NCBI RefSeq assembly: GCF_036588685.1
Contig: NC_086376.1
Span: forward strand, 20,088,001-20,152,000
Length of the DNA: 64,000 nt
From: Mytilus trossulus
Taxonomy: Eukaryota
Direction of reading: 5' to 3'
Made by a program: the position numbers and the translations under genes. Shown here piece by piece: positions 30,801-61,947 of this stretch (within the stretch, counting starts at the first letter, position 1; every line of letters begins with the position of its first letter). The notes under the pieces are model-generated. The model saw only the letters and a program-made list of their open reading frames with translations. It did no database searches and was not told the DNA's origin.

Positions 30801-33800
30801 TTTTAAAGGAAAAACACAAAAGATAATTGTTTTTAAGCCCTTTGATCTGAAACAACGAAACAATAAAATATAGGAATCAAAATATAGCAATCCACTATTA
30901 TAACCAAAACATGATAAAATTTATTCAACACACAGAAAAATAAATAGTCAGAATCTCACTTCATTATGAAAGAGGTCAATGAAACAAAGTATAGCAATAC
31001 ACTAACCAAAACATGATTAAGAGTTATTCAACGCTAAATAAAACGTTGACAAAATACCACTTTATTTAGAAAGGATTGTTATTATCTTTAACAATACGCT
31101 ATCCAAAACATGATTAAGATTTATTCAACACAAAAAAAAAATGCTGTCTCACTTTATTTTGAGACAATGACAACAATTATACTTATAAGAAAACACTTGC
31201 TTACAGAGTTATTAAACACAAAACCAATTAAGATTAGTTGCGAACATGTAGGGTGTGAAAGTGAAAGGGGGCGAACATGAGTTGGCGCAAACGTGAATGG
31301 GCGCGAACGGACCCGGATTCAGCCTATGTACCAGTGAGAAATATAGAAGCCTTTCTACGGTATTTATTTGTACAATTCAGGTAGTCTTGACCTATTCATT
31401 TGTCTTAAAAAAAAACCAGCCAGTTGGCACCTTCACTTCACACACACACATATACGAATATCAATTATATGCTTACGAGACATGTTGCATTGTTAAACTA
31501 ATTACGGTATGTGAAAATCAAGGCTTGCATAAAAACTATCCCAATATTAGAGACAGTGGCGTCATTTTTCTTCCGAGCTTTCAGCTCTTTGATTCTAAAC
31601 ATTCAGCAACATCTCAGATTCTTATGATTGTCTTGCTTTAAAAGGTAAAAACAAGCAAAACAATTGAACATAAACAACTTTCCTGTAATGTTTTACTCAT
31701 AATCTTCATGTGTGATATTTTCCTTGACTTATATGCGTGTTTGTAACAATACGGAAAATCAGAATTAAACAGTATTTATATTTAGTATTTTTATAAATTT
31801 AGAAACACGTCAGAGGGAATTCCCAAATTTTGATAACTTGCGAGAGTTCTCTGAAAGCCGATCGATAATTCTATTTCTGTCACAAGAACTGAAGAGGAGT
31901 ATTTCTATATTTTACCGTTAAGAAACTGATATTTGATACTGTACTCTCATAAAGAAATGCAGAACCATTCATCATATCATTTAATAAACGTTCTTGTTCC
32001 AAATCGCAAGTCGCGGATTGTTTATGTATTAATGCCCATGCGTGGTCTCACTAATTAGAGACAAAAAGAATTGTAGAGACAAAAAGCGTCAAGAAGCGAC
32101 AAGAAGAATAATATTAGCAACAAGAAACTATTTAGCGACAAGAAAACATTTTTTTATTTATATTACTTATTCGCATAAATATTAAAAACATATGCAAAAG
32201 AAAACAATTTCAACGACAGGAAAGTTGATTTTGATAGGGGAAAAAATGAAATTCAGTTGCTACATTTATTTACATGATATTTTATAAGGTATCACAGGAA
32301 GTATTACCTTTACCCAGTCGTTTTATGGTATTACTTTTACTTGTGTTTTAGAACAATAATATATTTTGTCTTTTTATTTGTTTTTAAAACTATTTTTGTA
32401 CAATATATACTTAACTTGCAAAATGCATTATTTGTGCATAATTGTCCAGAAAATACACACACAAATAGTGAAATACAAATTAAGAACTGAAATCAATCAA
32501 GAGGAAAAACCCTCTATTGAAAAACGCGCTAATGCAAGCTCAGTCCTTCTTGCCTTGGGCCAGTTTTAAACACATAATTAAGCATCCTTGAAATCACAAT
32601 ATGTTGTGATTTCAAGGATGCCTTTTTTTTTGTCTGAGCTGTTGTTACGGTAAACCGTGCGGACCTTCTTTTAATGTTACTTGATCAAATACGGTTACGT
32701 ATTGCGGTTACGGTAAACACATGTTAACGTTTGGTCTACATTCCTTCTTTAGGAATGGTACTTCTTGTTTTATCAATGAGACACTGCTAAGTGATTAAGA
32801 CTATTTGTTAGTCTAGTTTACCGTACCACCAAACAATCCTTTAACATTTCAGTTTCCCGTTTCTTTGTATTAAATGTTTGAGAAACAAGATAAGGATATT
32901 GATAGGTAAAGATTTCAGGGTTTCTGTCCATTGATATCGAAACATATCAGCCGCGAGCCAGAGAGTTTCACCTTGTGTCGAGCGACTGAACACCCAAAAT
33001 CTCTTATTTGTTCTTTCACTATGTTTGTGCTAGACAAACGTAGGCCTGACAACGTCTTGTGACGTCGCTGATAACTTCTCAAACACTATGACGTTGCTGA
33101 TATTATCTGCTCAGAGCAAAGACATTTCTAGGTAAACTAATTGTATGAGGGTACGGTAAACAAAGATGCAATACCAAAATAAAAGGACCCAGTATTATAC
33201 TTTATAGTCCAGTTTACCGTATCAGCATACATTTTTTTTTGTCTTCTGTGGAATTCATTTCTAATCCGAAACTCATTGAATAAATTGGAAGCAAATATCC
33301 CCTTGAACATTCAGACAGTGATTTAATTTCGTTTAGTTTGTTGTGGTTAACCTTCAGCGTGCGAAGAAACGGTAAACTGCAGAGTATACTTATACTAGTT
33401 GAGCTACGGTAAACCTTTAATAGAATTTTTATGGTTACGGTAAACATTGCAGTCACAAGCTATGGAAAAGTTTATGGTAACGGTAAACATATAAGAAAAA
33501 TGACTTAGAAATGTTAACCGTTTGCAAGAGTAGGTACCATTAATGAAAAGGGGAGCTATTTCCAAAAATGTACTATTTAATTATGTAAGGAAGCATTTAT
33601 TAAGACTTGTCTCCCCTTGAACATCAAGACATGGAAGAGGCCATATAGGCCGATTTACTATATAAGGCTTGCATTTCACTATTTGGGATCTTTATCACAT
33701 CACATCCACGCCAGTTTAAAATGGATTTTTTAATGAACAGTGGACTCTCAAATGTTGTAGCTCTTACTGAAGAAGTTTTCTCTGCCTCTAGCGAAATATT

Positions 33801-33943
33801 CGGTAAAGTTGCAATAAAGAAAGTCATCAAAACCTCAACTGAGTTTGAAGCTTTTCTCAGCCTCAAACACGAAAACATCGTCGAAGCCATTGAAATCATC
33901 GAAGCCGAAGAATTTGCCTTCGTTTTGATGGAATTTGCTGAAT

Positions 33944-36900
33944 GGGCTATTCCAGAAATAATCCATACCCCCCCTATAGAAGGTACATGTGGTTTGGAAA
34001 AAAATCCATGGAAAATTTTTGATGTGGTTCAGAAAAAAATCTGGAATTCCATGTCAGTCCTATAGAAGGCAAATAGATAAATAAAAATATTCCATGGAAA
34101 ATTATGATCTTGTTATTAAAAAATTTCTGGAAATCCAGAGCCATCCTATAGAAGGCAACTATAAAAGTTTAAAAATTCCATGGAAAATCTGGATTTTGTC
34201 ACTTTCAGTAAAATCTAATTTTTGAGCTTGTATGTATATCTGTAGTTCATTAGGTAATAATAAAGTCCAATATGTATCTTTACAAACAATGTATCAGTAT
34301 GTGGTATAGCTTTTTGCACATTGTTGAAGGCTGTATGATATTCTTAAGTTGTTAAAATATATCTTTTGATCTCTGTTGGGGAGTTAGTCCAAATAATTTT
34401 GATGTCTAGGAGAGCTATTTTAAGTTTTTGCTTTGACGCCTCCCCACACATCAAAGTAAGATCAAAAGAAGTGAAAATTGAAAAATACCCACAGGAGACG
34501 GCATGATTATCTGGACCTATAGTGAAGAGTTGTCTTATTGGCAATTTGGAAATGATACCACCTTTTATTATTTTCATACTACATCCATACATGTTGTAAG
34601 CCAGAGTTACCAGTACTGAACTTCAGTCTGAGATTTGTAAATTTGAAATCGTTTGCAAAAGGACCTAAAAAGAAGTGAAATGTGAACATTTGTTATGTAC
34701 GTGTACCTCAGATACTAACATAACATTCAGGGGATAAACATGTAGATGTTGATAGTGATAATACTTCAAAGAGATGCCTACTTCCAACACCACATGACAT
34801 GTTTGATAGTTTATTGGGGCATTTCTTAAGTACTTATTGGAGAGATAATAAATATTTTCCCATCTTTTCTTTTACCATGGAAGTTTAATAGATCTTCAAG
34901 TGAATTTAAATTGATATGAATACTGTCATTACTGTGTATTTTATAATTCATTCATGACAAAAATAATAATTTTAATAATTCTTTATTGAAAAGCACTTTA
35001 TGCCCATATGGACCAATGGCTTAAAACATTATACAGTTTACATAAAACAATGAAAATAAACAATGGAGACACTTTGAACTATAATTTGTCTTTTTTCAAA
35101 TCAATATATATATATATATAAGAGATTCAAATTATATCAAGGACTCCCTGCCCTCAGTCTTAGTGACTTTTTTTTTTAAAAAGGAGCCTAATTTGCAAGT
35201 GTCCTGTTTTGTTTCAGGATTGAGGATATGTTTTAATTTATCTAAATAATATTTTTTTTTTATCAACATGATAAATGGTTCTAACATCCAAATTTCACTT
35301 ATAATACTTAAAATTTTCATGTTTTATGGGTTTTTTTTATCATAAAGGAGTCATAATTCAATGCAGCTATAAGGGTAATGATAAAAAAACAACCATACTC
35401 AGTGGCGGGTCCAAATATTTTCATAAGTGGGGGTCCACTGACTGCCTAAGAAGGGACCCGCTCCAGTCACGCTTCAGTGATTCCCTTTATAAGCAAACAA
35501 TATTTTCCCAAAAGGGGGAGGGCATTGCCCCCTGCCCCCCCTAAATCCGCCTCTGATACCAAGAAATGAAGAATCAAAAGAAATGACATAGTAAATATAC
35601 TGGATGTTAAATATCAAATCAAGATTTTTGCAACTATTTACAAGTCAGTGTTTAAAAAAAATAACATAGTTCATTATCTGGATTTACAGGGTTTTATTTA
35701 TGTTCTCTACAAGATGTTTGTATTGAAATTTGTGAGAAACCACACACCAGGACACTGCAGGACCTACTGCTTTTCTTAGTTGTTGAGGTTGAAGATTATT
35801 TTATCTAGCCATTCAGTTGACTAACAATCAGTAGTACAAGCTTGATGAAATCCCACTGTGACCACATGGCCATTTCTGTGGATTTTAATTAATTATAAAA
35901 TGATATATATACTACATGTAATTATTTGAACTACATGTTATAAGACAAATGAGATTAAAACTAGGAATTATGTATCCACAATCCCTTGCTCTGCAAAAAT
36001 AAATATTAAGTCTCAGTTTTAAAATTATAAAAGTTTATTTGTTTATTAATATTAAAGTTGTTTCATTTATTTATCAATTATTATTATACATTGACTCTAT
36101 ATTGTCATTTGATGATCATTACAAATTGTTGAAGTGGATTAACATGATAACATCTATTATTTGAATATGTTTTGATTATAAACATAATGTATCATCTTTC
36201 ATTTCCATTATAACTTTTTTCAACTTTAAACATGTAAAAAATAAAAATGTCATTATTATACAAATTTAGAATTTAACAATTGTTTAAAAGTTTTGAAATT
36301 TTCTTTAATTTCATGATGTTTTAAAATGTAAAGAAATACAGGGATTTGGAAACAATAAGAATTTGTATAAATACGTTACCCAATGAAGGAGTGTTATGTC
36401 TAGATTTGGTGACTAGTTGCAGGCGACAAATAGCAAATCATAAAACTATGTACAGGAAATATTAAAAATGTCAAATTTTGGTTAGAGCAAGAACTTTATA
36501 TGAGATTAGAGACACATTTGTAATGAATTGTGAACTACTTTATATTTTTTTAAAACTTGTGTTGAATTTTTGATGGTTCATTTATATTTGGAGAAAACTT
36601 TTTCAAAGTGTGGCAGTGATACAAGAACATTAAATTTGATAACTTCTCAAATTTCATTCCAGTATACAATTTTATTTTAGAAATTCAGCCATTTCTTATG
36701 CAAATTTATATTGAACATTTTATAATATAGATATAAAGACAAAATACAAACTAAACACAAATTTTATTTTTCGAAAAAAAAAAGGAAAAAAAAAGGGGGG
36801 ATGTCTGGAGCTTATTAAATTCAAACCTCAGAAGATTTTGCCACTAGCTGATTTTGATATGAATGTATTTATGTGGAACAATACTTTTACACTATGTAGA

Positions 36901-39132
36901 ACACATGTGGTCATTTCTGGTCAGTCATCTAAGATCTATTGTGGTAATCGGAAGATTTCATGCAGTGATGACAAATAAACAAGTGTTTGAAATTAATGAT
37001 TTGTCAATAAGACGTTAATTGGTTATTGATACTGAAGGAACTCAAAATCTGGTGTTTATCATGTTTATAGCTTGAAAATCAGAGCAGATAGCATTTTATC
37101 CTAACAATAGATATTAGAAAAATGATAAGTTCAATGTCATTATAGGCACCAATAATGATTTAAATCATCGTTATAAATATGATAGTGAATTCACAATAAA
37201 ACTATAAGAAGAAAAAAATATCTCCTTACTTTAAGCCAATGTAAAACATTTGGTCATAATGGAATTATTTTGAGATGTAAATACCTTTTCAATTTTTAAA
37301 AGGCTTTGTTTCATTCTTGGAAAAGTTTTCTTTTTCTTTTATGAAGTCAAGTTTACATGTACAAGTATGTAAATTTGCATTTCAAATATCTGAATTGAGA
37401 ACTATCATGTTTAAGAATTGATTTTCAAAATATGTTTACCTACCCTGATATACACTATCTTTTTCGGGTAATTTATACTGATAGCGTTTGACATTTTCAG
37501 CTGAACAAATTTATCAATTTTACATAACTTAAATTATTGTATGCTGGTTCATATTCTGGACGCCAATCTTTGCTCCTTTTTGGAAATTAGTATGGCGTTC
37601 ATTATCACTGAACTAGTATATATTTGTTTAGGGGCCAGCTGAAGGACGCCTCCGGGTGCCGGAATTTCTCGCTACATTGAAGACCTGTTGGTGACCTTCT
37701 GCTGTTGTTTTTTTATTTGGTCGGTGTGTTGTCTCTTTGACCCATTCCCCATTTCCATTCTCAATTTTATTAGAAAAATATATCAAACTTGATGATTTCT
37801 TTTTTTGTGATTCCAGTACACAAACAAAAATAATTAAAAGAAATGAAAATTTGTAAAAAAAATCAATTAATATTGTCATTTATGCCTTATTTATTCATAT
37901 ATCTCAACTGTGTTTGTAATATGCTTTAAATTACACTAAAATAGAAAACAAACTATCCAACTTTAGAATTCCCTTGTAAATGGTGTAGTAACAGTTTGTA
38001 ACGTGATCAAAACAGCAGACAGCTTGTGTTGCATTCCCAAATAGCAATAAGGTTTATTGACTGTTAAAGATGAGAAATAATCATTAATACCGTTTAAGAT
38101 GATATAAGCATACAAAAACACAAGCTCTTTAAGTTATGATCTTTTAAGTCAACCCCTCAACTTTAAAACAATGTCATGAATGAGTTGGTGTAAACAAGAA
38201 GATGTGGTAAGAGTATCAATGAGACTACTCACAACCCAAATCACAGCGTATACAAAGTTAACAATCATAGATCAAAAACATGGAGCCTTGGCTCACACCA
38301 AACAACAAGTTATAAAGGGCCCTAAAAATAACTGAAAACCCAACTGTTGAATCAATATGAAAAAACAGAAACCAGAAACACCTATGGACATGTTACTACA
38401 CCAACAAATGACAACCATTTAACAATGGCATCTGATCAAGGACAGGTGCATACAAAAAATGCAGCATTTTAAACATAATATAACAGGAGCCAATCTTCAC
38501 CTCCACTTGAGACTGTAATGTAACATTACATTATAAAAAGACCCACTATAAATTATCAATTGAAATGGATGAACTTGATCACAAAGAAATTTTAACAAGA
38601 ACTAGTATTAAGCATACAGCTGCCATTTATGCATACACTGAATGAATGCCAGTTTGATTTAATCATCTACATGTGAGCTGCGGAACCTTAGCTCTTAGGT
38701 CCTTATGTTATTTATCATTTGACCATAGATCTGCAAATAGTCAAGAAATAACATAAGGATCTAAGAGCTACGGTTCCTCAACTATCTACATGTATGACAC
38801 AATAATCAATATAAACAATATTAAAACTTATATGTTTCATGTAAATATTTAGTTGGAAAATTTCTGTTGGAAGTTAAATTTGCCTGGAAATTTTCTTTTG
38901 GAAGTTAAATTTGCCTGGAAATATTTAATTGAACCAGATATTTTCTTGGAAGTTTTAGTATTATTCTCATTTTTTTCCTGGAATAATTCTTACAAATTGT
39001 TGAAAAATTCTGGAAATTATTGCCAACTAAGAGAATATTTTCTGGAAAATCTGATATTTTTACAGATTTTTTATCTGGAATTCCTAAACCTTCTATAGGG
39101 GGGGGGGGTATGGATTATTTCTGGAATAGCCC
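33944..39132. mobile_element. 5.2-kb non-autonomous TIR transposon, PIF/Harbinger (PHIS)-like
   Basis: TIR GGGCTATTCCAGAAATAATCCATACCCCCCC-TATAGAAGG and inverse; 3-bp AAT TSD, verified against the empty site in sister units; subterminal TGGAA repeats. Confidence 0.88.
38671..38783. mobile_element. Palindromic mini-MITE inside the 5.2-kb element
   Basis: Inverted arms GGAACC.TAGCTCTTAG.TCCTTATGTTATTT; ATCTACATGT on both sides. Confidence 0.65.
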
Positions 39133-39273
39133 AATTCGGAGATGTTTTTGAATACATAATGAACAACGGTCTCATGTCCGTTGAAGCCACCCTCTCTCTT
39201 TTCTCTCAGGTTGTCAAAGCAATCGAATACTGCCACTCAATTGGAATCGCCCACAATGACATTAAATTAGAAA

Positions 39274-40856
39274 GGCACTGGCTACGATTACATGGAAATG
39301 TAACAATAATAAAAATATTATTGTTACATAGGAGACTAAATGCCGGAATGCAAAGGCGGATAAGGAACCGATTAATTACGAATGTAACAATAATTACTGA
39401 GGCTACGGTTACATGGCGTTATTGTTACATGAAAAACAGCAATCATTAAACTTAAATCTTGCCGGTATAGTTTTGTTGCCTTAATCTTGCATATGTACGA
39501 AATAATACTTGTAACAATGATAAATAATAAATATTATCGTTAACGAATGGTGTTTAAATTTTTTTTCTAACGTATAAATGGTTTTGGTGTTTTAAAGATA
39601 CTACTTAAGGATGTTCGCTGCTCAGTTTCATAATAAATAACTTTTCATAAAACTTGTATGTATTGGTAGGGAATAAATTTAGGGATCAAAATAGCAAAAT
39701 AAAATATAGGGGTCCATGTGCTTGTTTTCGAGATATTAGCCATTGGAATTTTGGCGGGAAAATGTTCTCTCTTGATTTTTCATAGCTTTATCATTGACCA
39801 GTTAAAGTTCTCAAATACTATTATAAAATAAATAAAATTTTATAAGACTTTAACAAATGACTTATAATTATACATGTAAAAGATTTATAAAAAGAAAAAT
39901 GGGGGTTCATGGGGATTTTTTTTTAATTATTCAAATGGATAAAACCAGAGGATTCCAAAAATCTGACAAAAATTCCGAAACATGACAAGCAGACATCCTT
40001 AAGATAAGTAGTGCCAAAGGCGAAAATATAGACCAATGGTTTGTTGTTGAGAACTCGGGCTGAGAAAAGTGTTCACTTTAAGTATTTTAAAACTGCACAT
40101 CTACTCGTATTACTGTCATTATACAATGCACAATGGATGAAGAGATTCTTGTGACCAATTTTGTTGTGGGTGAAAAATTTAAAACTTGGGATTCGTTTGA
40201 AACAAAACTGAAACAATATCAAGACACAAATTTCATTCAGCTATACAAACGCAGTTCTAAAAAAAATTAACGGACGGCAATGTGACCATACTGAAAGATG
40301 ACATAAAACTACATCACATGCTTCCAACCAAAATATTAGATGAGAACATAAACATTGCTCGAGTGAAAAAGTATTTCCACCGGAAGCATGGCAAACATTA
40401 AAGGTCGCATTATCATCAAAAAGGGATATCGCAGAATGGAACTGTACAGTATGTGATACGGACGTTCACAGTGCGGCATCACTGGTGTGTGATGGCTGCT
40501 TGGAGTGGTTTCACCAAAAATGTGTCGGACTCAGAAATGCTCCAAAAACCACTTACTGGATATGTAGAAAATGTCATTGCAAATAAATAATTAAAGAATT
40601 TATATTTAATAATTGTATGTATTGTAAATATAAAATAAATGTCTTTAATTTTTATTATCTAGTACATTTTAATAGACCCATTGTATATTGCTGTTTTTCA
40701 TGTAACAATAACGCCATGTAACCGTAGCCTCAGTAATTATTGTTACATTCGTAATTAATCGGTTCCTTACCCGACCTTGCATTCCGTCATTTAGTCTCCT
40801 ATGTAACAATAATATTTTTATTATTGTTACATTTCCATGTAACCGTAGCCAGTGCC
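39274..40856 (+). mobile_element. Internally deleted Mutator-like element (MULE) with transposase remnant and PHD finger
   Basis: ~170-bp TIRs starting GGCACTGGCTACG; 9-bp TSD AATTAGAAA; remnants MDEEIL..VGEKFKTWDSFETKLKQY (40133) and a C4HC3 motif (40437-40586). Confidence 0.9.
39609..39998. mobile_element. Kolobok-like MITE nested in the MULE
   Basis: TTAA|GGATGT...ACATCC|TTAA. Confidence 0.65.
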
Positions 40857-42396
40857 AATTAGAAAACGTCTTGTTGTCTAATGGTTGTGTCAAATTGGCC
40901 GACTTTGGATTTGCCAAGTCGTCCGATATTGTTGCCGAATCTGAAGAATTTTGTGGAACCCTCCTCCCATACGCTGCCCCAGAAGTTATTATGGGAATGG
41001 AACACAGCACCATGAAAGCAGATATGTGGAGTATGGGAGTTATGCTCTACGTCATGCTCTTCGGAGCTTTCCCATTCTCCGATAGTGACGCTACCTCTAT
41101 GGTCCAATCTCAAATCTCAAACACCCTCTTTTTCCCAGAAAACACTAACGAAACGTTAAAGTCTCTCATCTCCTCTATGCTTGAACCCTCTATTGAAAAA
41201 CGCGCTAATGCAAGCTCAGTCCTTCTTGCCTTGAGCCAGTTTTAAACACATAATTAAGCATCCTTGAAATCACAATATGTTGTGATTTCAAGGATGCCTT
41301 TTTTTTTGTCTGAGCTGTTGTTACGGTAAACCGTGCGGACCTTCTTTTAATGTTACTTGATCAAATACGGTTACGTATTGCGGTTACGGTAAACACATGT
41401 TAACGTTTGGTCTACATTCCTTCTTTAGGAATGGTACTTCTTGTTTTATCAATGAGACACTGCTAAGTGATTAAGACTATTTGTTAGTCTAGTTTACCGT
41501 ACCACCAAACAATCCTTTAACATTTCAGTTTCCCGTTTCTTTGTATTAAATGTTTGAGAAACAAGATAAGGATATTGATAGGTAAAGATTTCAGGGTTTC
41601 TGTCCATTGATATCGAAACATATCAGCCGCGAGCCAGAGAGTTTCACCTTGTGTCGAGCGACTGAACACCCATAATCTCTTATTCGTTCTTTCACTATGT
41701 TTGTGCTAGACAAACGTAGGCCTGACAACGTCTTGTGACGTCGCTGATAACTTCTCAAACACTATGACGTTGCTGATATTATCTGCTCAGAGCAAAGACA
41801 TTTCTAGGTAAACTAATTGTATGAGGGTACGGTAAACAAAGATGCAATACCAAAATAAAAGGACCCAGTATTATACTTTATAGTCCAGTTTACCGTATCA
41901 GCATACATTTTTTTTTGTCTTCTGTGGAATTCATTTCTAATCCGAAACTCATTGAATAAATTGGAAGCAAATATCCCCTTGAACATTCAGACAGTGATTT
42001 AATTTCGTTTAGTTTGTTGTGGTTAACCTTCAGCGTGCGAAGAAACGGTAAACTGCAGAGTATACTTATACTAGTTGAGCTACGGTAAACCTTTAATAGA
42101 ATTTTTATGGTTACGGTAAACATTGCAGTCACAAGCTATGGAAAAGTTTATGGTAACGGTAAACATATAAGAAAAATGACTTAGAAATGTTAACCGTTTG
42201 CAAGAGTAGGTACTATTAATGAAAAGGGGAGCTATTTCCAAAAATGTACTATTTAATTATGTAAGGAAGCATTTATTAAGACTTGTCTCCCCTTGAACAT
42301 CAAGACATGGAAGAGGCCATATCGGTCGATTTACTATATAAGGCTTGCATTTCACTATTTGGGATCTTTATCACATCACATCCACGCCAGTTTAAA

Positions 42397-46917: not shown

Positions 46918-46929
46918 ACACATAATTAA

Positions 46930-46979
46930 GCATCCTTGAAATCACAATATGTTGTGATTTCAAGGATGCCTTTTTTTTT
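46930..46979 (+). terminator. 18-bp perfect hairpin + T9 after the kinase stop (representative; one per spacer); function unproven
   Basis: GCATCCTTGAAATCACAA-tatg-TTGTGATTTCAAGGATGC-c-TTTTTTTTT, starting 12 nt after TAA. Confidence 0.55.
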
Positions 46980-48006: not shown

Positions 48007-48013
48007 TATATAA
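48007..48013 (+). promoter_or_regulatory. TATA box of the kinase unit (representative; present in all 12)
   Basis: cTATATAAgg ~62 bp upstream of ATG, Inr-like TCACATC ~35 bp downstream of it. Confidence 0.7.
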
Positions 48014-48068
48014 GGCTTGCATTTCACTATTTGGGATCTTTATCACATCACATCCACGCCAGTTTAAA

Positions 48069-51838: not shown

Positions 51839-52576
51839 ATGGATTTTTTAATGAACAGTGGACTCTCAAATGTTGTAGCTCTTACTGAAGAAGTTTTCTC
51901 TGCCTCTAGCGAAATATTCGGTAAAGTTGCAATAAAGAAAGTCATCAAAACCTCAACTGAGTTTGAAGCTTTTCTCAGCCTCAAACACGAAAACATCGTC
52001 GAAGCCATTGAAATCATCGAAGCCGAAGAATTTGCCTTCGTTTTGATGGAATTTGCTGAATTCGGAGATGTTTTTGAATACATAATGAACAACGGTCTCA
52101 TGTCCGTTGAAGCCACCCTCTCTCTTTTCTCTCAGGTTGTCAAAGCAATCGAATACTGCCACTCAATTGGAATCGCCCACAATGACATTAAATTAGAAAA
52201 CGTCTTGTTGTCTAATGGTTGTGTCAAATTGGCCGACTTTGGATTTGCCAAGTCGTCCGATATTGTTGCCGAATCTGAAGAATTTTGTGGAACCCTCCCA
52301 TACGCTGCCCCAGAAGTTATTATGGGAATGGAACACAGCACCATGAAAGCCGATATGTGGAGTATGGGAGTTATGCTCTACGTCATGCTCTTCGGAGCTT
52401 TCCCATTCTCCGATAGTGACGCTACCTCTATGGTCCAATCTCAAATCTCAAACACCCTCTTTTTCCCAGAAAACACTAACGAAACGTTAAAGTCTCTCAT
52501 CTCCTCTATGCTTGAACCCTCTATTGAAAAACGCGCTAATGCAAGCTCAGTCCTTCTTGCCTTGAGCCAGTTTTAA
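51839..52576 (+). CDS. Intronless TSSK-like kinase copy 7
   Basis: Intact 245-aa ORF. Confidence 0.88.
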   Translation: MDFLMNSGLSNVVALTEEVFSASSEIFGKVAIKKVIKTSTEFEAFLSLKHENIVEAIEIIEAEEFAFVLMEFAEFGDVFEYIMNNGLMSVEATLSLFSQVVKAIEYCHSIGIAHNDIKLENVLLSNGCVKLADFGFAKSSDIVAESEEFCGTLPYAAPEVIMGMEHSTMKADMWSMGVMLYVMLFGAFPFSDSDATSMVQSQISNTLFFPENTNETLKSLISSMLEPSIEKRANASSVLLALSQF

Positions 52577-53727
52577 ACACATAATTAAGCATCCTTGAAA
52601 TCACAATATGTTGTGATTTCAAGGATGCCTTTTTTTTTGTCTGAGCTGTTGTTACGGTAAACCGTGCGGACCTTCTTTTAATGTTACTTGATCAAATACG
52701 GTTACGTATTGCGGTTACGGTAAACACATGTTAACGTTTGGTCTACATTCCTTCTTTAGGAATGGTACTTCTTGTTTTATCAATGAGACACTGCTAAGTG
52801 ATTAAGACTATTTGTTAGTCTAGTTTACCGTACCACCAAACAATCCTTTAACATTTCAGTTTCCCGTTTCTTTGTATTAAATGTTTGAGAAACAAGATAA
52901 GGATATTGATAGGTAAAGATTTCAGGGTTTCTGTCCATTGATATCGAAACATATCAGCCGCGAGCCAGAGAGTTTCACCTTGTGTCGAGCGACTGAACAC
53001 CCATAATCTCTTATTCGTTCTTTCACTATGTTTGTGCTAGACAAACGTAGGCCTGACAACGTCTTGTGACGTCGCTGATAACTTCTCAAACACTATGACG
53101 TTGCTGATATTATCTGCTCAGAGCAAAGACATTTCTAGGTAAACTAATTGTATGAGGGTACGGTAAACAAAGATGCAATACCAAAATAAAAGGACCCAGT
53201 ATTATACTTTATAGTCCAGTTTACCGTATCAGCATACAGTTTTTTTTGTCTTCTGTGGAATTCATTTCTAATCCGAAACTCATTGAATAAATTGGAAGCA
53301 AATATCCCCTTGAACATTCAGACAGTGATTTAATTTCGTTTAGTTTGTTGTGGTTAACCTTCAGCGTGCGAAGAAACGGTAAACTGCAGAGTATACTTAT
53401 ACTAGTTGAGCTACGGTAAACCTTTAATAGAATTTTTATGGTTACGGTAAACATTGCAGTCACAAGCTATGGAAAAGTTTATGGTAACGGTAAACATATA
53501 AGAAAAATGACTTAGAAATGTTAACCGTTTGCCAGAGTAGGTACCATTAATGAAAAGGGGGGCTATTTCCAAAAATGTACTATTTAATTATGTAAGGAAG
53601 CATTTATTAAGACTTGTCTCCCCTTGAACATCAAGACATGGAAGAGGCCATATCGGCCGATTTACTATATAAGGCTTGCATTTCACTATTTGGGATCTTT
53701 ATCACATCACATCCACGCCAGTTTAAA

Positions 53728-54465
53728 ATGGATTTTTTAATGAACAGTGGACTCTCAAATGTTGTAGCTCTTACTGAAGAAGTTTTCTCTGCCTCTAGCG
53801 AAATATTCGGTAAAGTTGCAATAAAGAAAGTCATCAAAACCTCAACTGAGTTTGAAGCTTTTCTCAGCCTCAAACACGAAAACATCGTCGAAGCCATTGA
53901 AATCATCGAAGCCGAAGAATTTGCCTTCGTTTTGATGGAATTTGCTGAATTCGGAGATGTTTTTGAATACATAATGAACAACGGTCTCATGTCCGTTGAA
54001 GCCACCCTCTCTCTTTTCTCTCAGGTTGTCAAAGCAATCGAATACTGCCACTCAATTGGAATCGCCCACAATGACATTAAATTAGAAAACGTCTTGTTGT
54101 CTAATGGTTGTGTCAAATTGGCCGACTTTGGATTTGCCAAGTCGTCCGATATTGTTGCCGAATCTGAAGAATTTTGTGGAACCCTCCCATACGCTGCCCC
54201 AGAAGTTATTATGAGAATGGAACACAGCACCATGAAAGCCGATATGTGGAGTATGGGAGTTATGCTCTACGTCATGCTCTTCGGAGCTTTCCCATTCTCC
54301 GATAGTGACGCTACCTCTATGGTCCAATCTCAAATCTCAAACACCCTCTTTTTCCCAGAAAACACTAACGAAACGTTAAAGTCTCTCATCTCCTCTATGC
54401 TTGAACCCTCTATTGAAAAACGCGCTAATGCAAGCTCAGTCCTTCTTGCCTTGAGCCAGTTTTAA
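53728..54465 (+). CDS. Intronless TSSK-like kinase copy 8 (G>R after APE)
   Basis: Intact ORF; EVIMRMEH instead of EVIMGMEH. Confidence 0.86.
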   Translation: MDFLMNSGLSNVVALTEEVFSASSEIFGKVAIKKVIKTSTEFEAFLSLKHENIVEAIEIIEAEEFAFVLMEFAEFGDVFEYIMNNGLMSVEATLSLFSQVVKAIEYCHSIGIAHNDIKLENVLLSNGCVKLADFGFAKSSDIVAESEEFCGTLPYAAPEVIMRMEHSTMKADMWSMGVMLYVMLFGAFPFSDSDATSMVQSQISNTLFFPENTNETLKSLISSMLEPSIEKRANASSVLLALSQF

Positions 54466-55616
54466 ACACATAATTAAGCATCCTTGAAATCACAATATGT
54501 TGTGATTTCAAGGATGCCTTTTTTTTTGTCTGAGCTGTTGTTACGGTAAACCGTGCGGACCTTCTTTTAATGTTACTTGATCAAATACGGTTACGTATTG
54601 CGGTTACGGTAAACACATGTTAACGTTTGGTCTACATTCCTTCTTTAGGAATGGTACTTCTTGTTTTATCAATGAGACACTGCTAAGTGATTAAGACTAT
54701 TTGTTAGTCTAGTTTACCGTACCACCAAACAATCCTTTAACATTTCAGTTTCCCGTTTCTTTGTATTAAATGTTTGAGAAACAAGATAAGGATATTGATA
54801 GGTAAAGATTTCAGGGTTTCTGTCCATTGATATCGAAACATATCAGCCGCGAGCCAGAGAGTTTCACCTTGTGTCGAGCGACTGAACACCCATAATCTCT
54901 TATTCGTTCTTTCACTATGTTTGTGCTAGACAAACGTAGGCCTGACAACGTCTTGTGACGTCGCTGATAACTTCTCAAACACTATGACGTTGCTGATATT
55001 ATCTGCTCAGAGCAAAGACATTTCTAGGTAAACTAATTGTATGAGGGTACGGTAAACAAAGATGCAATACCAAAATAAAAGGACCCAGTATTATACTTTA
55101 TAGTCCAGTTTACCGTATCAGCATACAGTTTTTTTTGTCTTCTGTGGAATTCATTTCTAATCCGAAACTCATTGAATAAATTGGAAGCAAATATCCCCTT
55201 GAACATTCAGACAGTGATTTAATTTCGTTTAGTTTGTTGTGGTTAACCTTCAGCGTGCGAAGAAACGGTAAACTGCAGAGTATACTTATACTAGTTGAGC
55301 TACGGTAAACCTTTAATAGAATTTTTATGGTTACGGTAAACATTGCAGTCACAAGCTATGGAAAAGTTTATGGTAACGGTAAACATATAAGAAAAATGAC
55401 TTAGAAATGTTAACCGTTTGCAAGAGTAGGTACCATTAATGAAAAGGGGAGCTATTTCCAAAAATGTACTATTTAATTATGTAAGGAAGCATTTATTAAG
55501 ACTTGTCTCCCCTTGAACATCAAGACATGGAAGAGGCCATATCGGCCGATTTACTATATAAGGCTTGCATTTCACTATTTGGGATCTTTATCACATCACA
55601 TCCACGCCAGTTTAAA

Positions 55617-56354
55617 ATGGATTTTTTAATGAACAGTGGACTCTCAAATGTTGTAGCTCTTACTGAAGAAGTTTTCTCTGCCTCTAGCGAAATATTCGGT
55701 AAAGTTGCAATAAAGAAAGTCATCAAAACCTCAACTGAGTTTGAAGCTTTTCTCAGCCTCAAACACGAAAACATCGTCGAAGCCATTGAAATCATTGAAG
55801 CCGAAGAATTTGCCTTCGTTTTGATGGAATTTGCTGAATTCGGAGATGTTTTTGAATACATAATGAACAACGGTCTCATGTCCGTTGAAGCCACCCTCTC
55901 TCTTTTCTCTCAGGTTGTCAAAGCAATCGAATACTGCCACTCAATTGGAATCGCCCACAATGACATTAAATTAGAAAACGTCTTGTTGTCTAATGGTTGT
56001 GTCAAATTGGCCGACTTTGGATTTGCCAAGTCGTCCGATATTGTTGCCGAATCTGAAGAATTTTGTGGAACCCTCCCATACGCTGCCCCAGAAGTTATTA
56101 TGGGAATGGAACACAGCACCATGAAAGCCGATATGTGGAGTATGGGAGTAATGCTCTACGTCATGCTCTTCGGAGCTTTCCCATTCTCCGATAGTGACGC
56201 TACCTCTATGGTCCAATCTCAAATCTCAAACACCCTCTTTTTCCCAGAAAACACTAACGAAACGTTAAAGTCTCTCATCTCCTCTATGCTTGAACCCTCT
56301 ATTGAAAAACGCGCTAATGCAAGCTCAGTCCTTCTTGCCTTGAGCCAGTTTTAA
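55617..56354 (+). CDS. Intronless TSSK-like kinase copy 9
   Basis: Intact ORF; two synonymous changes seen. Confidence 0.88.
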   Translation: MDFLMNSGLSNVVALTEEVFSASSEIFGKVAIKKVIKTSTEFEAFLSLKHENIVEAIEIIEAEEFAFVLMEFAEFGDVFEYIMNNGLMSVEATLSLFSQVVKAIEYCHSIGIAHNDIKLENVLLSNGCVKLADFGFAKSSDIVAESEEFCGTLPYAAPEVIMGMEHSTMKADMWSMGVMLYVMLFGAFPFSDSDATSMVQSQISNTLFFPENTNETLKSLISSMLEPSIEKRANASSVLLALSQF

Positions 56355-57505: not shown

Positions 57506-58243
57506 ATGGATTTTTTAATGAACAGTGGACTCTCAAATGTTGTAGCTCTTACTGAAGAAGTTTTCTCTGCCTCTAGCGAAATATTCGGTAAAGTTGCAAT
57601 AAAGAAAGTCATCAAAACCTCAACTGAGTTTGAAGCTTTTCTCAGCCTCAAACACGAAAACATCGTCGAAGCCATTGAAATCATCGAAGCCGAAGAATTT
57701 GCCTTCGTTTTGATGGAATTTGCTGAATTCGGAGATGTTTTTGAATACATAATGAACAACGGTCTCATGTCCGTTGAAGCCACCCTCTCTCTTTTCTCTC
57801 AGGTTGTCAAAGCAATCGAATACTGCCACTCAATTGGAATCGCCCACAATGACATTAAATTAGAAAACGTCTTGTTGTCTAATGGTTGTGTCAAATTGGC
57901 CGACTTTGGATTTGCCAAGTCGTCCGATATTGTTGCCGAATCTGAAGAATTTTGTGGAACCCTCCCATACGCTGCCCCAGAAGTTATTATGGGAATGGAA
58001 CACAGCACCATGAAAGCCGATATGTGGAGTATGGGAGTTATGCTCTACGTCATGCTCTTCGGAGCTTTCCCATTCTCCGATAGTGACGCTACCTCTATGG
58101 TCCAATCTCAAATCTCAAACACCCTCTTTTTCCCAGAAAACACTAACGAAACGTTAAAGTCTCTCATCTCCTCTATGCTTGAACCCTCTATTGAAAAACG
58201 CGCTAATGCAAGCTCAGTCCTTCTTGCCTTGAGCCAGTTTTAA
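57506..58243 (+). CDS. Intronless TSSK-like kinase copy 10
   Basis: Intact 245-aa ORF. Confidence 0.88.
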   Translation: MDFLMNSGLSNVVALTEEVFSASSEIFGKVAIKKVIKTSTEFEAFLSLKHENIVEAIEIIEAEEFAFVLMEFAEFGDVFEYIMNNGLMSVEATLSLFSQVVKAIEYCHSIGIAHNDIKLENVLLSNGCVKLADFGFAKSSDIVAESEEFCGTLPYAAPEVIMGMEHSTMKADMWSMGVMLYVMLFGAFPFSDSDATSMVQSQISNTLFFPENTNETLKSLISSMLEPSIEKRANASSVLLALSQF

Positions 58244-59393: not shown

Positions 59394-60131
59394 ATGGATT
59401 TTTTAATGAACAGTGGACTCTCAAATGTTGTAGCTCTTACTGAAGAAGTTTTCTCTGCCTCTAGCGAAATATTCGGTAAAGTTGCAATAAAGAAAGTCAT
59501 CAAAACCTCAACTGAGTTTGAAGCTTTTCTCAGCCTCAAACACGAAAACATCGTCGAAGCCATTGAAATCATCGAAGCCGAAGAATTTGCCTTCGTTTTG
59601 ATGGAATTTGCTGAATTCGGAGATGTTTTTGAATACATAATGAACAACGGTCTCATGTCCGTTGAAGCCACCCTCTCTCTTTTCTCTCAGGTTGTCAAAG
59701 CAATCGAATACTGCCACTCAATTGGAATCGCCCACAATGACATTAAATTAGAAAACGTCTTGTTGTCTAATGGTTGTGTCAAATTGGCCGACTTTGGATT
59801 TGCCAAGTCGTCCGATATTGTTGCCGAATCTGAAGAATTTTGTGGAACCCTCCCATACGCTGCCCCAGAAGTTATTATGGGAATGGAACACAGCACCATG
59901 AAAGCCGATATGTGGAGTATGGGAGTTATGCTCTACGTCATGCTCTTCGGAGCTTTCCCATTCTCCGATAGTGACGCTACCTCTATGGTCCAATCTCAAA
60001 TCTCAAACACCCTCTTTTTCCCAGAAAACACTAACGAAACGTTAAAGTCTCTCATCTCCTCTATGCTTGAACCCTCTATTGAAAAACGCGCTAATGCAAG
60101 CTCAGTCCTTCTTGCCTTGAGCCAGTTTTAA
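59394..60131 (+). CDS. Intronless TSSK-like kinase copy 11
   Basis: Intact ORF; downstream hairpin shortened by a 19-bp deletion. Confidence 0.88.
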   Translation: MDFLMNSGLSNVVALTEEVFSASSEIFGKVAIKKVIKTSTEFEAFLSLKHENIVEAIEIIEAEEFAFVLMEFAEFGDVFEYIMNNGLMSVEATLSLFSQVVKAIEYCHSIGIAHNDIKLENVLLSNGCVKLADFGFAKSSDIVAESEEFCGTLPYAAPEVIMGMEHSTMKADMWSMGVMLYVMLFGAFPFSDSDATSMVQSQISNTLFFPENTNETLKSLISSMLEPSIEKRANASSVLLALSQF

Positions 60132-61263
60132 ACACATAATTAAGCATCCTTGTTTCAAGGATGCCTTTTTTTTTGTCTGAGCTGTTGTTACGGTAAACCG
60201 TGCGGACCTTCTTTTAATGTTACTTGATCAAATACGGTTACGTATTGCGGTTACGGTAAACACATGTTAACGTTTGGTCTACATTCCTTCTTTAGGAATG
60301 GTACTTCTTGTTTTATCAATGAGACACTGCTAAGTGATTAAGACTATTTGTTAGTCTAGTTTACCGTACCACCAAACAATCCTTTAACATTTCAGTTTCC
60401 CGTTTCTTTGTATTAAATGTTTGAGAAACAAGATAAGGATATTGATAGGTAAAGATTTCAGGGTTTCTGTCCATTGAAATCGAAACATATCAGCCGCGAG
60501 CCAGAGAGTTTCACCTTGTGTCGAGCGACTGAACACCCATAATCTCTTATTCGTTCTTTCACTATGTTTGTGCTAGACAAACGTAGGCCTGACAACGTCT
60601 TGTGACGTCGCTGATAACTTCTCAAACACTATGACGTTGCTGATATTATCTGCTCAGAGCAAAGACATTTCTAGGTAAACTAATTGTATGAGGGTACGGT
60701 AAACAAAGATGCAATACCAAAATAAAAGGACCCAGTATTATACTTTATAGTCCAGTTTACCGTATCAGCATACAGTTTTTTTTGTCTTCTGTGGAATTCA
60801 TTTCTAATCCGAAACTCATTGAATAAATTGGAAGCAAATATCCCCTTGAACATTCAGACAGTGATTTAATTTCGTTTAGTTTGTTGTGGTTAACCTTCAG
60901 CGTGCGAAGAAACGGTAAACTGCAGAGTATACTTATACTAGTTGAGCTACGGTAAACCTTTAATAGAATTTTTATGGTTACGGTAAACATTGCAGTCACA
61001 AGCTATGGAAAAGTTTATGGTAACGGTAAACATATAAGAAAAATGACTTAGAAATGTTAACCGTTTGCAAGAGTAGGTACCATTAATGAAAAGGGGAGCT
61101 ATTTCCAAAAATGTACTATTTAATTATGTAAGGAAGCATTTATTAAGACTTGTCTCCCCTTGAACATCAAGACATGGAAGAGGCCATATCGGCCGATTTA
61201 CTATATAAGGCTTGCATTTCACTATTTGGGATCTTTATCACATCACATCCACGCCAGTTTAAA

Positions 61264-61947
61264 ATGGATTTTTTAATGAACAGTGGACTCTCAAATGTTG
61301 TAGCTCTTACTGAAGAAGTTTTCTCTGCCTCTAGCGAAATATTCGTTAAAGTTGCAATAAAGAAAGTCATCAAAACCTCAACTGAGTTTGAAGCTTTTCT
61401 CAGCCTCAAACACGAAAACATCGTCGAAGCCATTGAAATCATCGAAGCCGAAGAATTTGCCTTCGTTTTGATGGAATTTGCTGAATTCGGAGATGTTTTT
61501 GAATACATAATGAACAACGGTCTCATGTCCGTTGAAGCCACCCTCTCTCTTTTCTCTCAGGTTGTCAAAGCAATCGAATACTGCCACTCAATTGGAATCG
61601 CCCACAATGACATTAAATTAGAAAACGTCTTGTTGTCTAATGGTTGTGTCAAATTGGCCGACTTTGGATTTGCCAAGTCGTCCGATATTGTTGCCGAATC
61701 TGAAGAATTTTGTGGAACCCTCCCATACGCTGCCCCAGAAGTTATTATGGGAATGGAACACAGCACCATGAAAGCCGATATGTGGAGTATGGGAGTTATG
61801 CTCCACGTCATGCTCTTCGGGGCTTTCCCATTCTCCGATAGTGACGCTACCTCTATGGTCCAATCTCAAATCTCAAACACCCTCTTTTTCCCAGAAATTT
61901 TAGTAATTAAAAATACTTTTAATTGGCCAAATCAAACAAGAAATTGA
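61264..61947 (+). pseudogene. Kinase copy 12, truncated at the array end (61897) and read through into flank
   Basis: Matches unit up to ...FFPE, then unrelated ILVIKNTF...; G>V and Y>H substitutions. Confidence 0.9.

What the first reader, a model, noticed from the sequence alone, without database searches (positions are those of the whole stretch)
32508..61897. Young, highly homogeneous array of a compact TSSK-like kinase cassette (candidate ampliconic or selfish germline gene)
Seen: 12 near-identical 1.89-kb units, each a self-contained intronless gene with TATA box, 245-aa kinase, 3' hairpin+T tract and a motif-dense spacer; 8 copies have intact ORFs. Known: TSSK kinases are mostly intronless and testis-expressed; amplified kinase-related germline genes include Drosophila Stellate (CK2-beta-like) and mouse Smok, both tied to segregation distortion. 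Inference: a histone-cluster-like, dosage-amplified kinase locus, possibly a sperm or drive gene, or cargo of a self-amplifying element.
Basis: partly seen in the sequence, partly recalled or inferred. Interest (0 to 1): 0.92.

Follow-up and report, generated by a model that had tools for sequence, protein, structure and literature searches.

The report
Tandem array of rewired mussel kinase genes
A mussel chromosome carries twelve near-identical head-to-tail copies of a tiny intronless gene for an unusual sperm-kinase-like (TSSK-clade) enzyme; it is one of three such arrays kept alike by concerted evolution and kept intact by selection, but where the gene is expressed could not be tested.

Summary
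Window 32508-61897 holds about 12 units of 1889 bp, 98.7-100% identical. There are 12 kinase reading frames, 8 of them intact, and two transposon insertions near the 5' edge.

It has three such arrays, with about 12, 30 and 16 units on three chromosomes. The scan had already noted the other two (s1-820519, s1-820514).

The 245-aa protein lies inside the TSSK clade, in a mollusc subclade of short kinases. It sits on a long stem branch. It has lost all three glycines of the Gly-rich loop, the Arg of HRD and the activation-loop Ser/Thr, but keeps every catalytic residue.

- Between array types dN/dS is 0.14-0.18.
- Two array types recur in M. edulis and M. galloprovincialis, and the substitutions private to M. 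trossulus sit in all 13 intact copies of one array. The array is therefore homogenised, not young.
- A TATA promoter, eight or nine exact ACGGTAAAC sites per spacer and an 18-bp hairpin followed by T9 are conserved between diverged arrays.
- No evidence supports drive, transposon cargo or viral origin.

I read it as a dosage-amplified functional gene family, probably of the male germline.

The parts
32508..61897 (+). Whole tandem array: about 12 units of 1889 bp, interrupted by two transposons
   Evidence: Blastn of the unit against the window. The first unit starts at position 677 of the ATG-based unit and the last ends at position 634.
32508..32569 (+). 3' remnant of a kinase CDS at the left edge of the array (last 62 nt including the stop)
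   Evidence: The homology begins at ...AACCCTCTATTG.
33721..41242 (+). Broken CDS copy 1. Its pieces are 33721-33945, 39133-39273 and 40857-41242, split by the two transposons.
33946..39132 (.). Inserted non-autonomous DNA transposon, about 5.19 kb, with 32-bp perfect terminal inverted repeats and a 3-bp target duplication AAT
   Evidence: the repeat finder pair I3; junctions read
39274..40856 (.). Inserted 1.58-kb element with 170-bp terminal inverted repeats (97% complementary) and a 9-bp target duplication AATTAGAAA
   Evidence: the repeat finder pair I1; junctions read
42397..43138 (+). Broken CDS copy 2, frameshifted (its unit is 1893 bp)
44290..44943 (+). Broken CDS copy 3: the frame closes after 217 codons
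46180..46917 (+). Intact 245-aa kinase CDS (variant D2H)
48069..48806 (+). Intact 245-aa kinase CDS
49950..50687 (+). Intact 245-aa kinase CDS
51839..52576 (+). Intact 245-aa kinase CDS
53728..54465 (+). Intact 245-aa kinase CDS (variant G163R); the reference copy used for all searches
55617..56354 (+). Intact 245-aa kinase CDS
57506..58243 (+). Intact 245-aa kinase CDS
59394..60131 (+). Intact 245-aa kinase CDS
61264..61897 (+). Last CDS copy, cut off by the right edge of the array after about 211 codons
53500..53727 (+). Proximal promoter block conserved between array types (example unit). It includes a 45-bp conserved block, the TATA-like CTATATAAGGC at 53665-53675, and AAAATGG around the start codon.
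   Evidence: Three-array alignment; distance from TATA to ATG
53376..53495 (+). Cluster of four forward ACGGTAAAC sites, 241-352 nt upstream of the ATG (example unit)
   Evidence: The cluster is kept in the diverged C1 array.
54478..54527 (+). 3' hairpin (18-bp stem, 4-nt loop) plus T9, starting 13 nt after the start of the stop codon (example unit; present in every unit)
   Evidence: It is conserved in C1 with a longer stem.
54543..54614 (+). Two forward ACGGTAAAC sites, 15 and 78 nt after the T-run (example unit)
60144..60174 (+). Variant hairpin in the second-last unit. A central deletion of about 19 bp leaves an 8-bp stem followed by T9.
   Evidence: read directly

Best explanation
This is one of three tandem arrays of a functional multi-copy gene family in Mytilus. 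The arrays evolve in concert.

Each 1.89-kb unit is a complete small gene. It has a cluster of ACGGTAAAC sites, a conserved proximal promoter about 230 bp long with a TATA box, and a 5' leader of roughly 30 nt. It has an intronless 245-aa ORF in a good start context. A conserved hairpin followed by a U-tract begins 13 nt after the stop codon, and two more ACGGTAAAC sites follow it.

The protein is a stripped-down member of the TSSK clade:
- All three glycines of the Gly-rich loop are replaced (LTEEVFSA).
- HRD has become H-N/C/S/G-D.
- The activation-loop Ser/Thr is replaced by acidic residues (ESEEFCGT).
- The beta3 Lys, alphaC Glu, catalytic Asp, Asn and the DFG Asp are invariant.

From this I infer a constitutively configured kinase that does not depend on phosphorylation.

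Shown: the arrays are real in the assembly, old, homogenised by unequal exchange or gene conversion, and under purifying selection on the protein.

Inferred:
- Amplification to about 46 intact copies genome-wide serves dosage, that is, a burst of transcript at one stage. By analogy with other TSSKs that stage is most likely spermiogenesis.
- The ACGGTAAAC sites bind one sequence-specific factor.
- The hairpin and U-tract act at the RNA level, either in 3'-end formation or termination between closely packed units, or as a 3'-UTR control element.
For: Array anatomy and number.

Selection:
- dN/dS is 0.175 (C4 against C1) and 0.141 (C3 against C1), at dS 0.26.
- Within arrays the CDS varies less than the spacer: 0.54% of columns against 1.5-5.1%.
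- Between C4 and C3 the spacer is 91% identical and the CDS 98.5%.

Concerted evolution across species: array types are shared with M. edulis and M. galloprovincialis. The five sites where M. trossulus C1 differs from M. edulis carry the same residue in all 13 intact C1 copies; M. galloprovincialis shares the M. edulis residue at four of the five.

Wider family: 13 further 242-267-aa relatives at 68-81% identity keep the same odd motifs and all catalytic residues.

TSSK placement:
- The clade of all named TSSKs plus this family has 100/99 support against SNF1, CIPK, AMPK-like and CaMK sequences.
- The mollusc short-kinase subclade has 99/97 support.
- The family's stem branch is 1.04 substitutions per site.
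- The result holds when M. trossulus paralogues, including a SIK-like one, are added.

Conserved non-coding features:
- Eight ACGGTAAAC per unit survive in C1 although much of its spacer no longer aligns.
- Both arms of the hairpin and the T9/T10 run are conserved. The single arm change (A to G) gives a G-U pair, which an RNA helix tolerates.
- The promoter block and TATA box are conserved.

CpG observed/expected is 0.88-0.93 in the unit against 0.51 in the flanks. In molluscs this usually marks sparsely methylated genes that are restricted by tissue or stage; that reading rests on my own knowledge.
Against: - 'Male germline' is borrowed from the family name.
- The published M. edulis testis kinase TSTK1 is a different gene. 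Its qPCR primers do not match the unit.
- Loss of the whole Gly-rich loop and a shortened alphaC are typical of pseudokinases. In the AlphaFold model alphaC is helix 40-46 and the N-lobe pLDDT is 62-77. Catalysis is therefore not assured.
- Within arrays the new variants are mostly non-synonymous, for example 9 against 1 in C3. Single copies are thus under weak selection.
- No AATAAA lies before the hairpin, but ATTAAA or AATAAA lies 227-299 nt after the stop codon in all three array types. The hairpin may be an internal 3'-UTR element rather than the 3' end.
- Hairpin covariation rests on one substitution only.
Confidence: 0.6

Rival explanations
1. The protein is a pseudokinase or scaffold. 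The array makes large amounts of a non-catalytic, kinase-shaped protein that binds or sequesters partners, for example substrates or regulators of canonical TSSKs. This rivals only the protein mechanism, not the reading of the array.
For: - All three Gly-loop glycines are replaced, and there is a six-residue deletion after the loop.
- The beta3-alphaC segment is shortened.
- The HRD arginine is lost and the activation loop is acidic.
- The N-lobe is modelled with only moderate confidence and a 7-residue alphaC.
- The long stem branch of 1.04 substitutions per site suggests a change of function.
Against: K33, E41, D116, K118, N121, D133-F-G and A-P-E are invariant across 17 sequences down to 43% identity. 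Pseudokinases usually lose at least one of these; that generalisation rests on my own knowledge.
Confidence: 0.2
2. It is an ampliconic conflict gene. Copy number is driven by an arms race in the germline (meiotic drive or its suppression), as with mouse Smok/Tcr or Drosophila Stellate/Su(Ste).
For: - Multi-copy, homogeneous arrays of a kinase with rewired regulation, in a clade whose known members act in spermatids.
- A burst of protein change at the origin of the family.
Against: - Since that burst the protein has been under steady purifying selection, with dN/dS 0.14-0.18, not recurrent positive selection.
- The array types are stable across three species.
- There are three separate chromosomal loci.
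- No antisense or inverted copies were seen that could make suppressor small RNAs: all units of an array point the same way.
- No transmission or expression data exist.
Confidence: 0.1
3. It is an inert satellite-like repeat that happens to carry a decaying gene copy, spread by circular DNA or unequal exchange, and has no organismal function.
For: - Broken copies and transposon insertions sit at the array edges.
- In C4 and C3 the array starts and ends at nearly the same phase of the unit. That fits seeding from a circular multi-unit intermediate.
Against: - 8 of 12 copies here and about 46 of about 58 genome-wide are intact.
- dN/dS is 0.14-0.18.
- ORF length and catalytic residues are conserved in relatives at 68-81% identity.
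- The CDS is far better conserved than the spacer.
Confidence: 0.04
4. It is cargo of a transposon or an endogenised viral gene. The terminator-like hairpin, T-run and compact promoter would then reflect a viral or prokaryotic transcription unit.
For: The hairpin plus T9 passes a bacterial-terminator scan. The gene is intronless and compact. The unit size resembles that of small circular replicons.
Against: - The best matches in 2.9 million viral contigs are 24-31% identical.
- The nearest relatives are mollusc and other animal TSSKs.
- There are no terminal repeats, target duplication or transposase at unit or array ends.
- Genome-wide the gene occurs only in the three arrays plus a few degenerate fragments.
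- The hairpin loop is not conserved between array types, so it is unlike a replication-origin nonamer.
Confidence: 0.03
5. It is an assembly artefact: one or a few copies were over-expanded by the assembler.
For: Near-identical 1.9-kb repeats are hard to assemble. No reads could be examined.
Against: - Units carry private variants: units of 1881, 1870, 1893 and 1891 bp, the D2H and G163R variants, and a deleted hairpin centre.
- Two transposons with clean target duplications interrupt one unit.
- Multi-copy gene models of the same family exist in independent assemblies of M. edulis, M. galloprovincialis and M. coruscus.
Confidence: 0.03

Closest known systems
TSSK family (testis-specific serine/threonine kinases, TSSK1-6; CAMK group)
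   Same: - The family lies inside the clade formed by all named TSSKs, with 100/99 support.
- It is a short protein made of the kinase domain only, from an intronless gene.
- RefSeq already names the M. trossulus, M. edulis and M. galloprovincialis copies 'TSSK3-like'.
   Different: - No Gly-rich loop, a non-RD catalytic loop and an acidic activation loop in place of the regulatory Ser/Thr.
- A long stem branch.
- About 58 copies in three homogenised tandem arrays instead of dispersed single genes.
- Testis expression is not shown.
Short TSSK-like kinases of other molluscs (Haliotis 'TSSK3-like' at 261 aa, a Tegillarca granosa 257-aa protein, and unnamed 253-269-aa sequences)
   Same: - Sister lineages in one subclade with 99/97 support.
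- Similar length, a shortened beta3-alphaC segment and a shared C-terminal FPE...MLEP motif.
- Among the M. trossulus kinases sampled, only the array family falls in this subclade.
   Different: Those proteins keep GxGxxG, HRD and the activation-loop Ser/Thr. Whether they are arrayed is unknown.
Replication-dependent histone gene arrays, including the tandem histone units described in Mytilus (the Mytilus case from my own knowledge)
   Same: Compact intronless genes in homogeneous tandem arrays, with a conserved stem-loop just after the stop codon and no conserved AAUAAA before it. The arrays evolve in concert.
   Different: - The hairpin here has an 18-22-bp stem plus U9-10, not the 6-bp stem and 4-nt loop of histone mRNAs.
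- No Rfam family, including the histone 3' stem-loop, reaches its threshold.
- The product is a kinase.
Mouse Smok/Tcr and Drosophila Stellate/Su(Ste) (amplified kinase-related germline genes; from my own knowledge)
   Same: Multi-copy clusters of kinase or kinase-subunit genes with altered regulation.
   Different: They are not homologous in any close sense. Here there is steady purifying selection and arrays shared across species, and no evidence of drive, sex linkage or small-RNA control.
rDNA spacer organisation with Reb1/TTF-I sites (from my own knowledge)
   Same: One short site is repeated both just downstream of the transcribed part and upstream of the next promoter of a tandem unit. 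The core CGGTAA resembles the yeast Reb1 site CGGGTAA.
   Different: The resemblance is recalled, not tested. No binding factor is identified, and this is presumably a Pol II protein-coding unit.

Membership tests
TSSK family | Phylogenetic placement with named TSSKs, apart from CAMKL (AMPK, SNF1, SIK, CIPK) and CaMK kinases | tested here: met
   - In the IQ-TREE tree of 53 sequences, the TSSK clade that includes the array family has 100/99 support.
- With M. trossulus paralogues added, the same clade has SH-aLRT 98, and a SIK-like mussel sequence goes with the outgroup.
- Caveats: no full MARK sequence was available, and by raw score the best PDB matches are MARK kinase domains (131 bits against 114 for TSSK6).
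TSSK family | Canonical active-kinase motifs shared by TSSKs (GxGxxG, HRD, activation-loop Thr/Ser) | tested here: not met
   The alignment shows LTEEVFSA, H-N/C/S/G-D and ESEEFCGT in their place. The catalytic Lys, Glu, Asp, Asn and DFG are kept.
TSSK family | Short, intronless gene encoding the kinase domain only | tested here: met
   An uninterrupted 245-aa ORF; Pfam Pkinase covers residues 36-239.
TSSK family | Expression specific to testis or spermatids | not testable with these tools
Multigene family under concerted evolution | Copies within a species or array are more alike than orthologous arrays between species, with species-specific changes fixed in all copies | tested here: met
   - Identity within an array is 99.2-99.7%.
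- At the five sites where M. trossulus C1 differs from M. edulis, all 13 intact C1 copies carry the same residue. M. galloprovincialis shares the M. edulis residue at four of the five.
- Only protein sequences of the other species were available.
Histone-type 3' end (SLBP stem-loop) | Match to the conserved histone 3' stem-loop | tested here: not met
   The Rfam scan of 51000-56000 at E up to 1 lists only weak generic hairpin matches, all below their gathering scores, and no histone stem-loop.
Transposable-element cargo | Terminal repeats, target-site duplication, a transposase or Rep gene, and dispersed copies | tested here: not met
   The array junctions are plain, with at most a few bases of microhomology. 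The unit's only ORF of 150 aa or more is the kinase. The gene occurs only in the three arrays plus degenerate fragments.
Viral kinase or endogenous viral element | Closer to viral than to cellular kinases | tested here: not met
   The best matches in IMG/VR are 24-31% identical, against 36-47% to animal TSSK-like proteins.
Ampliconic or drive gene | Post-meiotic germline expression, copy-number conflict, transmission distortion | not testable with these tools
   No reads or crosses were available. The indirect signs (purifying selection, arrays shared across species) do not favour it.

The most novel reading that the evidence does not exclude
The unit may be a new kind of animal Pol II 'mini-gene', organised like rDNA or histone repeats. 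One dedicated DNA-binding factor would recognise ACGGTAAAC both upstream of the promoter and just after the gene. A long hairpin plus U-tract would form or protect a 3' end independent of poly(A). Together they would allow burst production of a constitutively 'on' TSSK that needs no activation-loop phosphorylation and works without a Gly-rich loop. Such a kinase could be needed in bulk in mytilid spermatids, conceivably in a sperm trait particular to these mussels.
Probability: 0.12. Interest if true: 0.8.

Novelty: new variant of a known kind. Interest (0 to 1): 0.55.

Why it matters
Tandem arrays that evolve in concert are classic for rRNA, histone and a few germline genes. A protein kinase amplified to about 58 copies in three such arrays, shared across mussel species, is unusual, and I found no paper describing it.

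The protein is a natural experiment in kinase design. It has no Gly-rich loop, no RD arginine and an acidic activation loop, yet every catalytic residue has been conserved through long divergence.

The spacers offer a clean, testable cis-regulatory grammar: an exact 9-mer repeated eight or nine times, and a conserved hairpin plus U-tract after the stop codon.

If the gene is expressed in the male germline, it would be a marker and a candidate effector of spermiogenesis in commercially and ecologically important mussels.

If expression is absent, or the kinase is ordinary in function, this remains a tidy example of concerted evolution and little more.

Tried and rejected
Tools that gave no answer:
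The DNA and source of the 68-81% relatives could not be fetched, so cross-species covariation of the hairpin and arraying in other genera are untested.
There is therefore no expression, 3'-end or copy-number evidence.

Searches that found nothing useful:
- The metagenome scan found only relatives at 40% identity or less. Records near this genome may be left out of that collection.
- The viral scan found 31% identity or less. Viral origin is rejected.
- Rfam gave only sub-threshold generic hairpins.
- Literature searches found no paper on this gene or array.
- The M. edulis testis kinase TSTK1 of PMC3144882 is another gene. Neither of its primers matches the window within 3 mismatches.

Results that were uninformative:
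- Foldseek on the AlphaFold model gave generic CAMK kinases (SIK3, AMPK, MARK) with poor rmsd, so it does not help to classify the subfamily.
- The genome-wide search for pairs of ACGGTAAAC gave 221 matches. I estimate that nearly all lie in the three arrays. The tool's reversed-pattern control was as high (265), so that control says nothing, and the match list was truncated.
- The search for the hairpin arm found exact matches only in the arrays among the rows listed. The 1-2-mismatch matches were not resolved.

Readings considered and dropped:
- A Pol III transcription unit. A T6 run lies right after the ATG, and by my own knowledge such a run would terminate Pol III.
- A CRESS-like replicon. 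The hairpin loop is not conserved and there is no Rep gene.

Full report
**The observation**

A 1889-bp unit taken from the window matches head-to-tail from 32508 to 61897, at 98.7-100% identity. Tandem Repeats Finder misses it only because its longest period is 500 bp.

In the phase of the reference unit the array consists of:
- a 486-bp partial unit;
- one unit interrupted twice;
- ten complete units of 1870-1893 bp;
- a final 1361-bp partial unit.

This is about 12 units once the two insertions are removed. Mean pairwise identity of whole units is 99.66%. G+C rises from about 0.32 in the flanks to about 0.38 in the array.

There are twelve starts of the kinase frame. Eight give intact 245-aa ORFs. 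Of the four broken copies, one is split by transposons, one is frameshifted, one stops after 217 codons and one is cut by the array end.

The two interruptions are real transposon insertions:
- A 5.19-kb element has 32-bp perfect terminal inverted repeats and a 3-bp target duplication.
- A 1.58-kb element has 170-bp terminal inverted repeats and a 9-bp target duplication.

Both lie inside one CDS near the 5' edge of the array.

**Where it is**

The contig lengths of the window's genome (94,312,406, 113,486,924 and 96,324,366 bp) equal those recorded for RefSeq Mytilus trossulus proteins of this family. I take the genome to be M. trossulus.

A six-frame search of the whole genome finds the gene in three arrays and essentially nowhere else:
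- this one on C4;
- about 30 units of about 1891 bp on C3;
- about 16 units of 1711-1727 bp on C1.

A few short degenerate fragments lie elsewhere. Counted as ORFs that start with Met and run 245 codons, intact copies number 8, 25 and 13.

The scan had already noted the other two arrays. A follow-up on the C3 array reached the same general reading (s1-820519, s1-820514).

Upstream of this array lies a Y-family DNA polymerase gene on the same strand. Its IMS-domain exon is at 13914-14486. A 499-aa ORF at 25403-26902 has weak UBZ-like features. Downstream there is a reverse-transcriptase fragment. The array is therefore intergenic.

**The protein**

Pfam Pkinase matches residues 36-239 at E 3.4e-51.

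An alignment with 13 further 242-267-aa relatives at 68-81% identity, from unnamed sources, and with a canonical 255-aa relative (P0024, 43%) shows the following:
- The family has replaced GxGxxG by LTEEVFSA, with a six-residue deletion after it.
- HRD is replaced by H-N/C/S/G-D.
- The activation-loop Ser/Thr is replaced by acidic residues (ESEEFCGT or ESDEFCGT).
- K33, E41, D116, K118, N121, the DFG triplet and APE are invariant.

The AlphaFold model has mean pLDDT 74.9 and shows a reduced N-lobe with a 7-residue alphaC. Foldseek returns generic CAMK kinases.

A maximum-likelihood tree gives these results:
- The family falls inside the clade of all named TSSKs, with 100/99 support against SNF1, CIPK, AMPK-like and CaMK sequences.
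- Within it, the family belongs to a subclade of short mollusc kinases (Haliotis, Tegillarca and unnamed sequences) with 99/97 support.
- The family sits on a stem branch of 1.04 substitutions per site, followed by short internal branches.

Adding seven M. trossulus paralogues does not change this. Three of them fall elsewhere in the TSSK clade. A SIK-like one joins the outgroup. None joins the short-kinase subclade. The arrayed gene is therefore the only mussel representative of that subclade among those sampled.

Viral contigs hold nothing closer than 31% identity.

**Age and selection**

Between the consensus coding sequences of the arrays:
- C4 against C1: dS 0.259, dN 0.045, dN/dS 0.175.
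- C3 against C1: dN/dS 0.141.
- C4 against C3: dS 0.026.

The spacer diverges much faster than the CDS. It is 91% identical between C4 and C3, against 98.5% for the CDS, and it is only partly alignable to C1.

Proteins of M. edulis and M. galloprovincialis sort by array type, not by species. The C1-type proteins differ from the M. trossulus C1 consensus at 4-5 sites and from C3 or C4 at 20-26. The C3-type proteins differ from C3 at 2 sites.

At the five sites where M. trossulus C1 differs from M. edulis, all 13 intact M. trossulus copies carry the same residue. This is concerted evolution of arrays that predate the split of these species. The high homogeneity is therefore not a sign of youth.

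Within arrays the few new variants are mostly non-synonymous. That is expected when each copy is individually under weak selection.

**Non-coding anatomy**

A three-way alignment of the consensus units serves as a footprint. The conserved parts are:
- the CDS;
- both arms of the hairpin and the following T9/T10;
- the ACGGTAAAC sites with a few flanking bases;
- a 45-bp block;
- the TATA-like CTATATAAGGC, 62 nt before the ATG;
- the AAAATGG start context.

The 9-mer occurs 108 times in the window, all in the array, against 0.23 expected. It occurs nine times per unit here and eight times per unit in C1. Relative to the gene:
- Four forward copies lie 241-352 nt upstream of the ATG.
- Two forward copies lie 15 and 78 nt after the T-run.
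- One further forward copy and two reverse copies lie between these groups.

Genome-wide, I estimate that nearly all closely spaced pairs of the site lie in the three arrays.

The hairpin has an 18-bp stem, a free energy of -28.6 kcal/mol and a z-score of -7.8. It begins 13 nt after the start of the stop codon. In C1 the stem is longer and the loop different. The single arm substitution gives a G-U pair, which fits an RNA-level role, but it is only one event. One unit here has lost the centre of the palindrome and keeps an 8-bp stem plus T9.

No Rfam family matches. No AATAAA or ATTAAA lies between the stop codon and the hairpin, but one lies 227-299 nt downstream in each array type. Whether transcripts end at the U-tract or run on to a poly(A) site is therefore open.

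CpG observed/expected is 0.88-0.93 in the unit, against 0.51 in the flanks and 0.43 in the inserted transposons.

**How the arrays spread**

The array junctions show no terminal repeats or target duplication.

In ATG-based unit coordinates this array starts at 677 and ends at 634. The C3 array starts at 165-263 and ends at about 183-190. Both ends lie inside the CDS, so neither array can be the place where a single gene first duplicated.

The near-equal start and end phases would have chances of about 4% and 8% under independent breaks. That fits seeding by a circular multi-unit intermediate that opened at one point. With two cases, and a C1 array that does not show the pattern, this is a suggestion only.

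**Verdict**

The array is real. It is a functional, dosage-amplified gene family under concerted evolution, and it encodes a rewired kinase of the TSSK clade.

The testis part is untested.

Noticed in passing
window 33946-39132: A non-autonomous DNA transposon of 5.19 kb, with 32-bp perfect terminal inverted repeats (GGGCTATTCCAG...) and a 3-bp target duplication AAT, inserted in a kinase CDS. It has no ORF of 115 aa or more.
   Followed up: partly
window 39274-40856: A 1.58-kb element with 170-bp terminal inverted repeats (97% complementary) and a 9-bp target duplication AATTAGAAA, in the same CDS copy. By my own knowledge, the long repeats and the 9-bp duplication recall Mutator-like elements.
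   Followed up: partly
window 60144-60174: One unit has a deletion of about 19 bp at the centre of the 3' palindrome. An 8-bp stem plus T9 remains, so the hairpin form survives. The neighbouring unit has T8 instead of T9.
   Followed up: partly
window 32508 and 61897; C3 array in L031-L037: The array starts and ends at nearly the same phase of the unit: 677 and 634 here, about 165-263 and about 190 in C3. Both ends lie inside the CDS. This would fit seeding of the arrays from circular multi-unit DNA. The C1 array does not show the pattern.
   Followed up: partly
window 32508-61897 against window 1-32507: CpG observed/expected is 0.88-0.93 in the units, against 0.51 in the flanks and 0.43 in the inserted transposons. 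This suggests the array is spared germline methylation.
   Followed up: no
window 13914-14486 and 25403-26902: Upstream neighbour on the + strand: an exon with an impB/mucB/samB (Y-family DNA polymerase) domain, E 8.8e-26. A 499-aa ORF without a Pfam match has weak language-model look-alikes that carry zf_UBZ or IMS_C. It is possibly the large C-terminal exon of the same polymerase gene.
   Followed up: partly
window 3183-4322, 9370-9569, 11109-11327: Unrelated tandem repeats: a 161-bp unit (3.8 copies), a 135-bp unit (4.1 copies), and two separate pairs of a 104-bp unit about 1.7 kb apart.
   Followed up: no
L031-L037 (G000:C3:16300001-16370000): The identities of successive C3 units to the C4 unit repeat in a pattern about seven units long. 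This suggests a higher-order duplication of about 13 kb inside that array. The units at its far edge are only 81-86% identical.
   Followed up: no
G000:C10:40235393-40235548 and G000:C11:49642203-49642409: Short, stop-containing fragments of the arrayed kinase, 65% and 50% identical over 52-69 residues, lie away from the arrays. They are possibly old orphan copies.
   Followed up: no
L042:9114-9950 (G000:C4, about 9 kb past the window end): A 278-aa ORF on the - strand with a weak reverse-transcriptase match (RVT_1, E 1.7e-4, below the Pfam cut-off). It is a retroelement fragment downstream of the array.
   Followed up: no
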